From assembly GCF_002571385.2 (NCBI RefSeq), contig NW_019217810.1:383609-447608 (forward strand): 64,000 bases of DNA, given 5' to 3'. A model generated the notes under the pieces. That model did not search any database. It was not told where the DNA came from and worked only from the letters and a program-made list of their open reading frames with translations. This DNA is from Stylophora pistillata. Its lineage: Eukaryota. Numbering within the stretch: position 1 is the stretch's first letter; each line of letters starts with the position of its first letter. Positions 22,204-30,177 of the stretch are shown here, in pieces. Both the position numbers and the translations under genes were made by a program.

Positions 22204-25200
22204 ATGAAGGTACTATTTTTTGTGAGCGTTTTATTGTGTGCGGCAGCGAAAGGTAAGTTAAAAGAAGTGAGTTTACTTTTGAATAAGGGCCCATTTTGGT
22301 GATTTTTGTATAAGACCATAAATATTGTGGTATAAAATATCTTGTGACCTGTTCGTCAATGTACTAAAACAAACCTGGTTTGTGTGTTCATTCATAACAA
22401 TAATACATGTATTGAGAAACATTAAAGGTTGCATATTGAGGCAAGTAAACCTGCACTTCGCCCTCCTTTTAGCCAGGAACAGATGAAAAAGGAGAGACTC
22501 CTTCAGACGAATGTTATCGACTTTCTTCCTTAATATGTTTACATATAATCCCAAGTGAAACAGCGAAATGTTAGTCGATATCCCGCCCCTAAAAAAAAAC
22601 AAAAACAAAAAAAAACAAAAACAAGAAAAACAAAATACTAAAGTAAGTCACGTTTTACGAAGTATCATTACACGACTATCTTGTTCATTCTTGTGGTACG
22701 GTGACATGATTGGCGGGGAGTAAAGCTTACTTTTTCACTCATACTCCTCCGTGAATAAAAACAGGTTTAGGTCACCTTCTTATACTAACTTGGTCGGAAT
22801 TGCTTCATTGATATAAAGGTAGAAATGTAGGATGATTGAAAATAAGAAATAGCAGTAATAGCGACTCTCTTATAATATCACTGACTGTCGACTTTGACTT
22901 TTGTAAACCAACCGAAATAAAGCACAACCGTATGTAAATTAGCACCACTAAAGCAAGAAAACTTCATTATGTTTCCTCTACTTCGTTTCAGTCCTTGCTT
23001 TTCAGAGTTCCTACATACGGGACTGTTTGGATGCCCACAACGCAGTTCGAGCTCGGCATGGAGTGCCAGCCCTAAACTGGTCAGTAGATATCGCTGTTAG
23101 TGCACAGAAATGGGCCAATCATCTTGCAGCAATAGATCAACTTCAGCACGACTCTTCAACACCTTTTGGGGAAAATCTGTTTTACATGTACGGAGGTGAC
23201 CCAGAGCAAGCTTGCGGTCGGGCAGTGAATAACTGGTACCAGGAGGGTAAAAATTATGACTTCAGGTCTCCACATCTCGATGAGAGCACCAGTAAGTGAC
23301 CGAAGACTAGACTGGTCTATTTTAAAGAGATCATACGCATAAACCAGGTCACAAACTGTTTGTTCTGCATGAACATAAAAAAGTAACTTGTGGTCACAAA
23401 GCCATGGCTGTTGCACTATTAAACCTTTCAATTTGTTTCTTCCTAAGTTGAAATGCCCAATGGCCTCTTTACCATTGACCGGAACCAACCGTTTGGGATT
23501 TAACCTCTGATATAGCCACTCGCGATTTGGACGAGGGTTTTGGCTACCCCGTAGTACAGATATGCATATTGCGAAGTGAGCAAAATCCATTGAACTCCAT
23601 GATCCTTTTTCAGGTCAGTTCAGCCAGTTAGTTTGGCGGGGCTCTAAAGATGTTGGCATTGGTACGGCACAGAGTAAATCCGGAAACTTTTTTCTGGTGG
23701 CTCGCTACAGTCCCCGTGGAAATATCGATGGTAAATTCGACGACAACGTTCTGGATGTAATGGGACAGCCTTCAATTGAAAGTAGTCCAGAGACGAAAGA
23801 TGATAAAGCGTCCGGCAACAATCCAGGTGAGAAAATCATCGTCAAAAATGGCGAAAAAATCTCATAAAAATTAATAGAAGGAGTAAATACCGTTATGTTT
23901 TAATTTGATCAGCATGGACGCAAATATAATGGTGGGCGATGAGTTTGTTGGACGTTTCAGCCGATGCTGCATGCTACTCCAATTTTTTATGGCCTCCAGA
24001 CATAATCTACGGCCATCACCATTAAAGTTGCAAGACCTTACGCACCTAGTTGAGACTTACGTATCATTTACAAGCTGTAATAAAAATTTCTGTTCGCTTT
24101 ACCGGTATTAAGAAGATTTTAACTTGTAAGAAGAAGGAAATGTCATATTCAAGTGATATTTAAGTGATATAACAATAAAAAACTCATGGAACCTTAAAGA
24201 GCCATACTCCAATTGTTACCTACATAATTTGTGATAAAAGGGATCGTTATATTTTTGTTCAGCTCAAGGTGAATCTTCAAATCCGCAAGCTAGTAAGGAC
24301 CAAAACCTTGTTTATTTCAAGGAAGTAAACCTTCATCCGAGTATGGCAGATCTGGATAACACGACTGAACCAAACCCCCCTCCAATACAACAAGCTAGTG
24401 TAGAATCTGGAACAAATGAGGGCGCATCTTTGGAAGGCAGTCGAGGACCTGAGGAGAGTTACCCCAATTCTATACCAGAGAGTCACGTTTCGGACAGTAA
24501 AGACCCCTCTTATGCTTCTAATTCTGGGACGAATGAAGCACTAAGTGTTTCCCAACAGGCTTTAAACGAGCCAGAAACCATACCAAATAACGCAGAGGCC
24601 AGTTTGGTAAGCCCAAATGAGGAGCCAAGTCATAAAGAAGACAGCGATTTAAATAGAAAACTAAGTTCTTCTGAACCAGATAACATGAATAATGAAGTTT
24701 TGCCTCTGTATGAGGGTTCTGACATCAATGCCATGAATTCGGGAGCCCTACATCAGGGATCCGAAATAAAAGACATGAAAGCAAGGCCTACTTATGCTGC
24801 TTTGAATCCAGCAGAGATGTTTACCAGGCCAGGAATCGAGGACAGTAGAAAGGCTAAGGAGACTTCAAACTATGATCGGCAGGAAGAAAAAGATGCGAGA
24901 CTAGAGAACTTTGCTAATTTACCTATGAACGATGAGGAGCCGCCAAAGAGTGATAAACCACCTGGCCTCTCATACGTGATTCCTCTGGCTGCTAAAATAC
25001 CCAAGAAGCCCGCAGTAACACCAATAAAGTTGCCCCCCGCCATATCTCTAATCACGCCAAAGAGAGGTATGACATAGTTTCAAAGAAATTCTTCTTTTGT
25101 GAGATGGAAAGTTTACCTATTTTTCAGTAGTTTTTTAACGGTACCATAAGAAAACAATATTACCCCGCATTCCATTCACAGAGAATGACAAAAAAAATTG

Positions 25201-28200: not shown

Positions 28201-30177
28201 AATATGAGTCAGCAGGTAAGAGAAAAAGGACCCGTTCTTTGCTTTAGTGAAAACAAATTTTGGCTTTCTAATGTCTAAGGTAAAGGAAAATTCTTCTCTA
28301 GGTAAACTGAGTGGCATCTCAGCGGAACACATGTTTTTCTTTGGTGCACCATGACAAGCGAAAGATGAGTTGACTTGGTTTCGATACAAGTCTTGCATGC
28401 TTGCCTATGTCAGTTTTACTTTGCTGGCTCTATTTACTTTACCTGGTAGTCACCACAAAACGGTCAACTGAAAACAACTCAACAATATCTGATAACTTTA
28501 TAATCAAATTTTAATAGGAGGCAGTGTGGCCGAGTGGTTAGAGTGTCGGACTTGTAATCCGCCGCTCCCGGGTTCGAATCCCACCCTGACCACTGGATCC
28601 AGGCTGTCTCACGGTAGCCCCGAGTTCAGATCCTTGGCCACGCTTGTAAATAGCCAACTGGTTTGCCTTCGGCCGGTTGGGGTTCTTAGACCATTTGCTT
28701 CATTTGTTTGCAAGGACCACAATGGAAACTACTGGTTCACCAGTAATTGTGTAATCCTAACAAGACTTTTTCATTTTTTTTTTTTCATCATAGGCAGTTT
28801 TTAGGATTGAATTTAAAAACATGCCTTTGTGTGTTTGTTTTTCTTTTCAGTTGCTCTACCTGCAGGATATCTAAAACCTAACAGACCAATACAGAAACAA
28901 GGTGTAGGGGTTTGCGCACAACCATGCTCCAAACCAAACATCTGCTACTCCACAGGTTGCGGTGTAGCCTGCTGTGCCTTCCACCCTCATGAAAACAAGT
29001 ATCACCCCCCTGCACGCCTCTTGCCACAGGTGCTCCCATCATGCCCTGGTACATGCGACGACAGCTGTTTCCCGGATTGTGATGATGATTGTTGCACTGA
29101 CATGATGCAGGATGCTCCTCCGGCGCCCGCCGCAATGGCAGGTGCTAGTCCTAGCATGACATGTCCGGGATCTTGTCATTTCTCGTGTTATCCTCAGTGC
29201 AGCCCACATTGCTGTAATACACAATACGTGCCTAACCCATGCCATCCCTCGTGCCCAGCCTACTGCGCGCCAAGTTGTGATAACGCTTGTTGCGCGGCTA
29301 GAAAATCCATAGTTAATAGGTAAGTTTCTCAATCTGTCGGATGCGATAGCATAATTCATTGGTAAAAGCATGATAGCACAGAAGCATGAAAGGAAGAGCT
29401 TTTATCATTTACCCACAATTTGTCAAAATAAAACCGAACATAAAAATATAGACACGCTCTCCCTTATGCCTAGAATAGAAAGATCCAAGAATATAGGTCC
29501 TCGCCCATTCGCATGTAGGGTCGACGATCCTGTCATTGTCCTTGCCTATGCGCTTAACTGCGTGAGACGTTGTAAGTCAAATCCTCTGTTCTTTAACTTC
29601 CCCTTTTTTTTATATCGGGTTACTCTTCTGCCCTCAATCAAATATCTTTCAAGATCTAAGCTCGAATAGCTAAGCTTCAAGATGAGTCAAGAGAATTTGT
29701 GTTCTATCATCCTCTAGCGTACAAGCTCGTCTCTTTGTATTTCCTTTTTATCCCAGATATAGTGATGATATTATGCGACAAATTTCCTGTTGATCACGTC
29801 TCGGTTTAATTCAAAAAGCAAATATTCAACGGGACTCTTTCAGTAATCTACATCTGCACACCACTTAGACTACAGCCTAATTGTTGCGGCTAAACTAACT
29901 ATTAAATACTTCTAGACTCTCCAAACAGTACAGCCGGTACAGAAGTGCCCAACGAGCCATAGCACGTCAGATGTACTTGAGAAAGCATCTCAAACTACCA
30001 TTCAGACGTCCGAAACCAGTAAGACTGGCTCGACCAGTGCGGCCAAGACAGAGGTCTTACTACACGAGACGCGTTCGACCAGAGAGCCTAGGACTTGAAG
30101 AATATGACCGAAGTATCATTCATTCTGCGCAGACAGAAACCTCTTCTAGAAATGGTGCACAGTTTTTAACTGTCTGA
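22204..30177 (+). CDS. Gene C: secreted CAP/SCP (GAPR-1-like) domain, acidic linker, four minicollagen-type CRDs and an Arg-rich tail (NOWA-like), ~698 aa
   Basis: Exons 22204-22252, 22992-23291, 23614-23826, 24263-25066, 28851-29319 and 29916-30177 (2097 nt, phases consistent). Signal MKVLFFVSVLLCAAAKVLA; CAP motifs LDAHNAVRARHG, GENL, WYQE, QFSQLVW, LVARYSPRGN; CRDs in exon 5. The last exon is less certain. Confidence 0.85.
25399..25563. mobile_element. Short MITE in gene C intron 4
   Basis: Inverted ends gcgttcacactt / agtgtgtgaac and internal cgggcac/gtgcccg inverted motifs. Confidence 0.45.
26311..26382 (-). repeat. tRNA-like segment of an interspersed repeat (SINE-like); second copy at 27675-27746
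   Basis: GGCTTGTTAGCTCAATTGGTAGAGCG...GGTTCGAATCCCGTACAAGCC with A and B boxes, a mismatched anticodon stem and repeat-type flanks (cctgatttttttcaggtc). Confidence 0.65.
28517..28690 (+). mobile_element. tRNA-derived SINE
   Basis: A box TGGCCGAGTGG and B box GGTTCGAATCC, followed by a non-tRNA body (cggtagccccgagttcagatccttggccacgcttgtaaatagccaactggtt). Confidence 0.75.

What the first reader, a model, noticed from the sequence alone, without database searches (positions are those of the whole stretch)
22204..30177. NOWA-like CAP + multi-CRD + basic-tail protein in an anthozoan, with the lectin function on neighbouring genes
Seen: signal peptide, CAP domain, ~300-aa acidic disordered linker, four CRDs and an Arg-rich tail. 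Established: Hydra NOWA is SCP/CAP + C-type lectin + eight CRDs and co-polymerises with minicollagens. Inference: gene C is a NOWA counterpart in which the C-type lectin is replaced by a linker, while adjacent gene A supplies lectin + CRDs, i.e. a 'split NOWA' locus. Whether this reflects orthology or convergence is open.
Basis: partly seen in the sequence, partly recalled or inferred. Interest (0 to 1): 0.75.

Follow-up and report, generated by a model that had tools for sequence, protein, structure and literature searches.

The report
Coral CAP–SEA–cysteine-rich stinging-capsule protein gene
This is a real, already annotated but unstudied stony-coral gene for a secreted protein that carries a CAP domain on an acidic stalk, a SEA domain and four of the cysteine-rich cross-linking units typical of stinging-capsule walls; it is conserved in a sea anemone and is a relative in style, not a split copy, of Hydra's NOWA.

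Summary
The gene has nine exons (22204-30177, + strand). Each exon translation is an exact, consecutive piece of RefSeq XP_022779840.1 (Stylophora pistillata LOC111321271, 799 aa, "uncharacterized").

RNA joints show them. They encode a SEA domain (Pfam E 2e-8; the fold search's top five hits are all SEA domains, Z 8.3-10.6). The architecture is therefore signal peptide, CAP, acidic linker, SEA, four CRDs and a basic tail. Oculina and Nematostella orthologs keep it.

"Split NOWA" is not supported:
- The neighbours' lectin is SUEL-type, not C-type.
- The same genome holds CAP + C-type lectin + CRD-like exons together on another contig.
- This gene's CAP is only 27% identical to the one complete CAP of that cluster that I compared.

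Best reading: a cnidocyst structural protein anchored by its CRDs, with a possibly self-cleaving SEA hinge. Cell type is untested. The scan earlier noted another SEA + Cys-rich gene on other DNA of this genome (s1-791455).

The parts
22204..22252 (+). Exon 1: start codon and signal peptide (16 codons + 1 base; donor gtaagt, phase 1)
   Evidence: Sequence read; translation is residues 1-16 of XP_022779840.1; hydrophobic
22992..23291 (+). Exon 2: N-terminal two thirds of the CAP domain
   Evidence: Pfam CAP E 1.6e-13, profile 2-85; exact substring, residues 18-116; 80-82% identical single-exon ORFs in related corals
23614..23826 (+). Exon 3: C-terminal third of CAP plus start of the linker
   Evidence: Pfam CAP profile 86-117; joint 23825/6->24263 in one contig of RNA run X1; residues 118-187
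24263..25066 (+). Exon 4: acidic, Ser/Thr/Pro-rich linker (268 codons), no Pfam family
   Evidence: 15 homologous exon ORFs at 43-79% identity that all end at ...TPKRG and then diverge; unique in the genome
25226..25335 (+). Exon 5 (Ea): SEA domain, first third
   Evidence: Pfam SEA profile 2-35, E 3.1e-4 on the exon alone; joint 25335->25991 in 8 reads of X24; its junction with exon 4 is not among the listed joints but is present in the natural spliced ORFs P0191, P0233 and P0193
25991..26049 (+). Exon 6 (Eb): SEA domain, middle
   Evidence: Joints 25335->25991 and 26049->28082 (X24 8 and 5 reads, X1 one contig); residues 493-511
28082..28215 (+). Exon 7 (Ec): SEA domain, last part, with the NGSVIATLGLLF hairpin (G514-S515)
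   Evidence: Joints; X1 contig record 5 runs 28081-28212 then 28848-29319; G and S invariant in 7 of 7 aligned sequences; lies in the strand-turn-strand of the model
28851..29319 (+). Exon 8: four minicollagen-type CRDs (28913-28975 atypical CX3CX5CX4CX3CC; 29042-29095, 29162-29215, 29240-29293 canonical CX3CX3CX3CX3CC)
   Evidence: PDB NOWA CRD 2hm3 E 0.0026; 13 homologous exon ORFs at 60-91% identity, with all 24 Cys invariant in the 7-sequence alignment
29916..30177 (+). Exon 9: basic Arg/Tyr-rich tail and stop codon (TGA 30175-30177)
   Evidence: Sequence read; residues 714-799; junction present in P0191/P0233; outside the stretch given to read laying, so no read evidence from this genome
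11097..13605 (-). Context, gene A: five CRDs plus a SUEL-type lectin; its last exon is collinear with CRD1-3 of this gene
   Evidence: BLASTP 36% over 107 aa, E 2e-5; the only other genome match to the CRD exon
17705..18849 (-). Context, gene B: SUEL-type lectin exon plus an acidic exon, no CRD found

Best explanation
This is a nine-exon, single-copy gene for a 799-aa secreted mosaic protein. Its order is signal peptide, CAP domain (closest to the GAPR-1/Pry1 kind), a 290-aa acidic Ser/Thr/Pro-rich stalk, a SEA domain, four minicollagen/NOWA-type cysteine-rich domains, and a 95-aa strongly basic Arg/Tyr tail.

Shown: the gene structure, the domains, expression as spliced RNA, and conservation of the whole architecture in stony corals and in Nematostella.

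Inferred: the protein is made in developing stinging cells and secreted into the capsule vesicle. There its CRDs are cross-linked by disulfide exchange into the minicollagen polymer of the capsule wall or tubule, as described for NOWA and minicollagens. The CAP domain would be held out on the acidic stalk, and the basic tail may pair with acidic matrix components.

More speculative: the SEA domain keeps the Gly-Ser of the self-cleavage motif in all seven sequences aligned. The protein may therefore be cut there in the secretory pathway and held together non-covalently.

It belongs to the wider class of CRD-bearing cnidocyst proteins and resembles NOWA in plan. It is a separate, old family and not a NOWA ortholog or a split NOWA.
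For: - Gene model: canonical GT..AG sites read. Joints 23825/6->24263, 25335->25991, 26049->28082 and 28215->28851 appear in RNA runs.
- Identity: all nine exon translations are exact consecutive substrings of XP_022779840.1.
- Spliced ORFs: P0191 (427 aa, on a 1,684-nt contig) and P0233 (476 aa, on a 3,562-nt contig) cover linker, SEA, CRDs and tail.
- Domains: CAP E 2.8e-19 and SEA E 2e-8.
- SEA fold: 1ivz Z 10.6 over 107 residues, MUC16 Z 9.8 and 9.6, TMPRSS6 Z 8.8, 2e7v Z 8.3, then a drop to Z 5.9.
- CRDs: the third CRD matches the NOWA CRD (2hm3, E 0.0026), and all Cys are invariant.
- Orthologs with the same order of parts: Oculina 848 aa at 77%, a JGI protein of 760 aa at 65%, Nematostella LOC5502610 of 788/800 aa at 40%.
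- Copy number: single copy.
- Neighbourhood: two genes with SUEL lectin domains, one with five CRDs, lie beside it. SUEL lectin domains are known from nematogalectins (Hwang 2010, cited in passages seen).
- Literature seen as passages: NOWA is a C-type lectin with C-terminal minicollagen CRDs, now placed on the tubule (PMC10014300).
- Exon shuffling: CAP, linker and SEA are each flanked by phase-1 introns, as expected for shuffled extracellular modules.
Against: - No test of cell type or localisation was possible.
- RNA depth is low: 0-3x in X24 with about 6% of the run read, and near zero in X21.
- The exon 4 -> exon 5 joint and the exon 8 -> exon 9 joint were not seen in this genome's reads. 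The first is not among the listed joints (8 more joints were not shown); the second lies outside the stretch laid.
- X1 and X5 cover the introns as well, so they hold DNA or pre-mRNA.
- The structure model is poor outside the SEA part (mean pLDDT 45), so the CRD and tail folds are untested.
- SEA self-cleavage is inferred from two invariant residues only. The usual motif, recalled as G/SVVV, reads GSVIA or GSIIP here and overlaps an NGS glycosylation sequon.
- In this species the conserved His of the CAP motif HFSQLVW is Gln.
Confidence: 0.6

Rival explanations
1. It is the anthozoan ortholog of Hydra NOWA. It lost the C-type lectin domain, and the neighbouring lectin-CRD gene took over that function.
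For: The order CAP at the N-terminus, CRD array and basic C-terminus is the same. CRD3 matches the NOWA CRD. [quoted passage not shown] I could not find out whether that gene is the ortholog of this one.
Against: The neighbours' lectins are SUEL-type, not C-type. A SEA domain sits where the lectin would be. CAP + Lectin_C + CRD-like exons lie together on contig C34 of the same genome. The CAP is 27% identical over 60 aa to the one complete C34 CAP compared, against 40-52% to other paralogs. The CAP-SEA-CRD plan is already present in Nematostella.
Confidence: 0.08
2. It is a mucin-like surface or matrix protein (CAP on a glycosylated stalk with a SEA domain, as in membrane mucins). It would act in mucus, adhesion or, in corals, the skeletal matrix, with the Cys-rich units serving general cross-linking outside stinging cells.
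For: A Ser/Thr/Pro-rich stalk followed by SEA is the mucin plan, and the best fold matches are MUC16 SEA domains. The linker is Thr-rich in Nematostella. An unidentified 'GAPR-1-like' protein was found in soluble Stylophora extracts (PMC5762905, table seen). A signal-peptide + SEA gene of Acropora is expressed in scattered oral ectoderm cells of unknown type (PMC2629781).
Against: There is no transmembrane segment after the SEA domain. Four CRDs with the exact CX3CX3CX3CX3CC pattern follow instead, and in the passages I read this pattern is described only in cnidocyst proteins. The ortholog in a non-calcifying anemone argues against a skeleton role. Neighbours carry nematogalectin-type lectins and CRDs.
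Confidence: 0.17
3. The long protein is an annotation fusion of two genes: a secreted CAP-linker protein and a separate SEA-CRD-tail protein.
For: The joint 25066->25226 was not among the joints listed for this genome's reads. An ATG lies in frame in exon 5.
Against: The natural spliced ORFs P0191 and P0233 read straight through ...TPKRGKDFRVEIRF.... The junction is in frame with canonical sites. A protein starting at that ATG would lack a signal peptide. Models in four species keep both halves. Depth in X24 is similar on both sides.
Confidence: 0.03

Closest known systems
NOWA (nematocyst outer wall antigen) of Hydra
   Same: Secreted protein with an N-terminal CAP/SCP domain and a C-terminal run of minicollagen-type CRDs. 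CRD3 here matches the solved NOWA CRD (2hm3, E 0.0026). The presumed mode of action is also shared: disulfide cross-linking into the minicollagen polymer. A basic C-terminus in NOWA is recalled, not seen in any call.
   Different: No C-type lectin domain; a SEA domain and a 290-aa acidic stalk stand in its place. There are four CRDs, against eight in NOWA (recalled). The CAP is of the ordinary GAPR-1/Pry1 kind, whereas NOWA's CAP is described as highly derived (PMC3627010, passage). The genome has separate CAP + C-type lectin + CRD-like loci.
Minicollagens
   Same: The CRD pattern CX3CX3CX3CX3CC, with Pro/Ala-rich spacers between CRDs.
   Different: No Gly-X-Y run of 4 or more triplets in 5 of 5 family proteins checked. 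The protein is much larger and has globular CAP and SEA domains.
SEA-domain mucins and type II proteases (MUC16, MUC1, TMPRSS6, enteropeptidase-like)
   Same: SEA fold (Z 8.3-10.6). A Ser/Thr/Pro-rich stalk lies N-terminal of the SEA domain. The Gly-Ser sits at the hairpin where SEA domains self-cleave.
   Different: The anchor after the SEA domain is a CRD array and a basic tail, not a membrane helix. The head is a CAP domain. Cleavage is untested.
GAPR-1 / Pry1-type CAP proteins (the UniProt automatic name of this protein)
   Same: The best solved relatives of the CAP exon are yeast Pry1 (E 2.8e-9) and human GAPR-1 (E 3.8e-8).
   Different: Those are small single-domain proteins. Here the CAP domain makes up under a fifth of the chain, and the conserved His of HFSQLVW is Gln in this species.
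Gene A of the same window
   Same: Its last exon is collinear with CRD1-3 here: an atypical 'C..PC.KP..C' CRD, then a CPGTC CRD, then a CPGSC CRD, followed by a Tyr-rich basic tail. Identity is 36% over 107 aa, E 2e-5. It is the only other genome hit to the CRD exon.
   Different: Opposite strand; it has a SUEL lectin and polyproline spacers but no CAP or SEA.

Membership tests
NOWA | Signal peptide / secretory protein | tested here: met
   Hydrophobic N-terminus (GRAVY 2.17 for the first 20 residues) in this protein, and 1.21 and 2.13 in the two orthologs measured, P0243 and P0244. No dedicated signal-peptide predictor was on hand.
NOWA | N-terminal SCP/CAP domain | tested here: met
   Pfam CAP E 2.8e-19, residues 29-147
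NOWA | C-type lectin domain between CAP and CRDs | tested here: not met
   Pfam on the 799-aa protein finds only CAP and SEA. The stretch between them is a disordered acidic linker.
NOWA | C-terminal array of minicollagen-type CRDs | tested here: met
   Four CRDs; match to NOWA CRD 2hm3 at E 0.0026. NOWA's number, eight, is recalled.
NOWA | CAP domain orthologous to NOWA's CAP | tested here: inconclusive
   No Hydra NOWA full-length sequence could be fetched. Against the one complete CAP of the same genome's CAP + C-type lectin loci: 27% over 60 aa, and no phmmer hit for exon 2. Forty other CAP exons match at up to 52%.
NOWA | Expression in developing nematocytes and presence in capsules | not testable with these tools
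   Only bulk RNA runs were available. Supplements of the cell atlases are closed.
Minicollagen | Central Gly-X-Y collagen triple-helix stretch | tested here: not met
   No run of 4 or more G-X-Y triplets in 5 of 5 family proteins
Minicollagen | Terminal CRDs of pattern CX3CX3CX3CX3CC | tested here: met
   Three canonical and one variant CRD
SEA domain (PF01390) | Sequence profile above the curated cut-off | tested here: met
   34.7 bits against a cut-off of 26.4, E 2e-8; also met in P0191 (37.1 bits) and P0233 (28.8 bits)
SEA domain (PF01390) | Alpha/beta sandwich fold | tested here: met
   The top five of 48,161 chains are all SEA domains, Z 8.3-10.6; the next is Z 5.9. The model's pLDDT in this part is 55-79.
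SEA domain (PF01390) | Self-cleavage at Gly-Ser in the beta2-beta3 turn | not testable with these tools
   G514 and S515 are invariant in 7 of 7 sequences and lie between strands 134-140 and 143-148 of the model. Cleavage itself needs a bench test.
CAP superfamily (PF00188) | CAP profile match over the full domain | tested here: met
   Profile positions 1-116 of 117

The most novel reading that the evidence does not exclude
The gene defines an undescribed, hexacorallian-wide class of stinging-capsule protein. A self-cleaving SEA domain would act as a mechanical break point between a CRD anchor, welded into the minicollagen wall or tubule, and a CAP domain on an acidic mucin-like stalk. At the nanosecond discharge, or during tubule eversion, shear would pull the two SEA halves apart and shed the CAP-stalk part onto or into the target. 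This would be a wall-tethered, force-released payload. Together with the earlier-noted Ala/Lys-SEA-Cys-rich gene of this genome (s1-791455), it would make 'payload-SEA-CRD' a modular design principle of cnidocysts.
Probability: 0.12. Interest if true: 0.75.

Novelty: new variant of a known kind. Interest (0 to 1): 0.45.

Why it matters
CRD-bearing proteins are the building blocks of one of the most extreme organelles known. Outside Hydra, few apart from the minicollagens have been described. Papers differ on whether NOWA exists outside Hydra or Medusozoa at all (PMC4195985 and PMC3627010 against PMC6161364 and PMC12549020; passages seen).

This work shows two distinct CAP + CRD designs side by side in one coral genome. 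One has a C-type lectin (contig C34). The other has a SEA domain (this gene), and it is conserved to Nematostella, where it can be knocked out. That makes the question of what anthozoans use in place of NOWA directly testable.

It also puts a SEA domain, a module known elsewhere for force-sensitive self-cleavage, among candidate capsule proteins. On the practical side, it corrects a misleading automatic name (GAPR-1) for the protein.

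Tried and rejected
- **Spliced orthologs by exon.** Exon-by-exon searches found only single-exon ORFs called on genomic contigs of related corals: CAP exon, linker exon, CRD exon. They show exon conservation and exon ends but no gene models. The length window of the search for homologous proteins hid the full-length proteins. They surfaced only through the listing of cluster members.
- **CRDs among CAP hits.** 0 of 165 proteins then on hand (150 CAP hits and 15 linker hits) carried a CRD pattern.
- **Genome-wide CRD census.** The protein search with the CRD exon scored only 6 candidates, so the CRD gene count of this genome is not known.
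- **CRDs downstream of every CAP locus.** 20 of about 40 planned 10-kb stretches were fetched. The statement that only the C34 locus has CRD-like exons near a CAP gene therefore covers half of the loci.
- **SEA exons against solved structures.** Nothing significant: exon Ec hit colicin M by chance (E 0.11), and exon Ea hit MUC16 at E 1.8.
- **C34 CRD-like exon against solved structures.** No NOWA or minicollagen hit.
- **Hydra NOWA full-length sequence.** It could not be obtained, so there is no CAP tree with NOWA.
- **Paper searches.** Accession numbers and locus names gave 0 papers or only the NVE17236 paper. 'NOWA1/NOWA2' returned Paramecium papers. 'nematocyst' + 'SEA domain' gave 3 papers, none describing this architecture. 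Supplements are closed; the marker tables of the Stylophora and Nematostella cell atlases, and the table behind 'the four NOWAs', may already list this gene.
- **Joining my own exon translations.** I did not do this for any search or fold. The identical natural database protein P0193 and its relatives were used instead.

Full report
**What is there.** The + strand between 22204 and 30177 carries open pieces that look like exons of a eukaryotic gene.
- Pfam places a CAP domain on two of them: 23027-23296 at E 1.6e-13 (profile positions 2-85) and 23601-23864 at E 0.018 (profile positions 86-117).
- A relaxed regular expression for the minicollagen cysteine pattern, run over all six frames of the window, gives 9 hits. 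Four lie in one + strand exon (28913-29293). Five lie on the - strand at 11334-13135, which is gene A.
- The third of the four matches the solved CRD of Hydra NOWA (2hm3, E 0.0026). It matches minicollagen CRDs more weakly (1sop, E 1.1).

**Gene model.** I read the splice sites directly. The exons are:
- exon 1, 22204-22252
- exon 2, 22992-23291
- exon 3, 23614-23826
- exon 4, 24263-25066
- the CRD exon, 28851-29319
- a tail exon that must begin at 29916 (acceptor ttctag, phase 2) and not at the ATG at 29971. With the acceptor next to that ATG, the frame hits a stop after three codons.

**RNA evidence.** I laid two contig runs and two raw-read RNA runs on 23590-29589.
- The CAP-to-linker joint (23825/6->24263) is in one X1 contig.
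- The supposed 3.8-kb intron is not one intron. Joints with GT..AG ends appear at 25335->25991 (8 X24 reads), 26049->28082 (5 X24 reads and one X1 contig) and 28215->28851 (one X1 contig of 604 nt, 1 X21 read and 2 X24 reads).
- These define three small exons. All are in frame with the linker before them and the CRD exon after them.
- The first small exon alone hits Pfam SEA (positions 2-35, E 3.1e-4).

Points against or limiting:
- The joint 25066->25226 was not among the joints listed; 8 more joints were not shown.
- The tail joint lay outside the stretch.
- Depth is low, 0-3x.
- X1 and X5 also cover introns, so they contain DNA or pre-mRNA.

**Natural full-length protein.** Exon-wise homology searches returned only genomic single-exon ORFs of related corals. 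There were 15 for the linker at 43-79% identity and 13 for the CRD exon at 60-91%. They do show that the exon ends are conserved...TPKRG followed by divergence, and ...VNR followed by a stop.

Listing the members of those clusters gave three useful proteins:
- P0193 = XP_022779840.1 / PFX32058.1, 'uncharacterized protein LOC111321271 [Stylophora pistillata]', 799 aa. UniRef names it GAPR-1.
- P0191, a 427-aa ORF on a 1,684-nt contig.
- P0233, a 476-aa ORF on a 3,562-nt contig.

The last two contigs are too short to hold the introns, so I infer that they are spliced RNA. They read through linker, SEA, CRDs and tail, and so include the two junctions that my reads did not show. Each of my nine exon translations is an exact substring of P0193, in order, separated only by the split codons.

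**Domains.** On P0193, Pfam gives CAP (residues 29-147, E 2.8e-19) and SEA (residues 459-530, E 2e-8, above the cut-off). SEA is also found in P0191 and P0233.

An AlphaFold model of P0191 with a 7-row alignment is poor overall (mean pLDDT 45) but reaches 55-79 in the SEA part. A search of 48,161 solved chains puts five SEA domains on top: 1ivz Z 10.6, MUC16 Z 9.8 and 9.6, TMPRSS6 Z 8.8, 2e7v Z 8.3. The next hit is Z 5.9.

The Gly-Ser of NGS[VI]I is invariant in 7 of 7 sequences. It lies in the turn between two strands of the model, which is where SEA domains self-cleave.

Composition:
- linker: 290 aa, pI 4.6, net charge -20
- CRD block: 24 Cys
- tail: 95 aa, pI 11.8, 24 K+R

There is no Gly-X-Y run in 5 of 5 family proteins checked.

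**Distribution.** With residues 457-799 of P0193 as the query, three long proteins match:
- Oculina patagonica LOC144644187, 848 aa, 77%
- a JGI protein, 760 aa, 65%
- Nematostella vectensis LOC5502610, 788/800 aa, 40%

All have the same order of parts and four CRDs. The search reaches only proteins of 439-1398 aa that share words with the query, so absence from Medusozoa is not shown. In this genome the gene is single copy.

**Relation to NOWA.** The neighbours' lectin domains are SUEL-type (PF02140, E 2.4e-12 and 4.9e-12), not C-type.

One locus, C34:335.9-341.7 kb, has in a row on the + strand:
- a CAP exon (E 1.4e-5; E 1.8e-9 in the genome search)
- two Lectin_C exons (E 3.2e-4 and 3.2e-9)
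- an exon with two CRD-like units and a basic end

Next to it lie a second CAP + Lectin_C gene and a third CAP with one CRD-like unit. A NOWA-type arrangement is therefore present elsewhere in the genome. I have no transcript evidence for it, and its CRD-like exon does not hit solved CRDs.

This gene's CAP exon finds 40 other CAP exons at up to 52% identity, but none from C34. phmmer finds 20 CAP ORFs in the fetched loci, but not the complete C34 one. BLASTP against that complete C34 CAP gives 27% over 60 aa. Its best solved relatives are Pry1 and GAPR-1.

In the literature passages I read:
- NOWA is called restricted to Hydra (PMC4195985) or to Medusozoa, with a highly derived CAP (PMC3627010).
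- 'The four NOWAs' of Nematostella are mentioned without architecture (PMC12549020).
- NOWA has been re-placed on the tubule (PMC10014300).

I could not map any of those gene names to this family. No paper in the library holds its accession numbers.

**Origin.** CAP, linker and SEA are each bounded by phase-1 introns, the pattern expected for exon shuffling of extracellular modules (established knowledge). The CRD exon is collinear with the last exon of gene A: an atypical first CRD, then a CPGTC CRD, then a CPGSC CRD, then a Tyr/Arg-rich tail. Identity is 36% over 107 aa, E 2e-5, and that exon is the only other genome hit. A shared CRD cassette between neighbours is likely.

**Verdict.** This is a real, annotated but unstudied gene. 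It is a CRD-anchored mosaic protein, most likely of the stinging capsule. It resembles NOWA in plan but is a distinct, old family with a SEA domain. The 'split NOWA' idea is not supported. Cell type, localisation and SEA cleavage remain to be tested.

Noticed in passing
window 26154-26418 and 27518-27782: Two direct copies (265 nt, 99% identical, 1,364 nt apart) of a tRNA-derived repeat inside the gene's long intron. tRNA-like matches lie on the - strand at 26310-26382 and 27674-27746. Both carry enormous RNA depth from copies elsewhere. The second copy starts right after the single N at 27517, so part of the duplication could be an assembly effect.
   Followed up: partly
G000 contig C34:335900-362500 (loci L023, L016, L024, L015): A tandem cluster on the + strand: CAP + two Lectin_C exons + an exon with two CRD-like units and a basic end; then CAP + Lectin_C; then CAP + a 452-codon exon with one CRD-like unit and a long charged stretch; then another Lectin_C. 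EGF-like exons lie between them. This is the NOWA-type plan in a coral, without transcript evidence so far.
   Followed up: partly
window 23614-23640 (protein residue 118-119 of P0193): The conserved His of the CAP motif HFSQLVW, present in the Oculina, JGI and Nematostella orthologs, is Gln in this species.
   Followed up: no
window 28085-28100 (protein residues 513-517): An N-glycosylation sequon (NGS) overlaps the conserved Gly-Ser of the SEA hairpin in all seven sequences. Glycosylation there could compete with or modulate cleavage.
   Followed up: no
window 17705-18849, - strand: Gene B: a SUEL-type lectin exon (E 4.9e-12) next to an acidic Ser/Thr-rich exon, with no CRD found. Together with gene A and this gene, that makes three secreted-looking, cnidocyst-style genes within 20 kb.
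   Followed up: partly
window 56250-58736, + strand: Long ORFs with a reverse-transcriptase-like YLDD motif, followed by an ORF resembling a tyrosine recombinase. This is probably a DIRS-like retroelement. The reading is by eye only.
   Followed up: no
window 23790-24190 and 25070-25990 in runs X1 and X5: Two runs filed as RNA cover the introns at about the same word depth as the exons. They therefore hold genomic DNA or much unspliced RNA, and their contigs alone cannot show exon limits.
   Followed up: no
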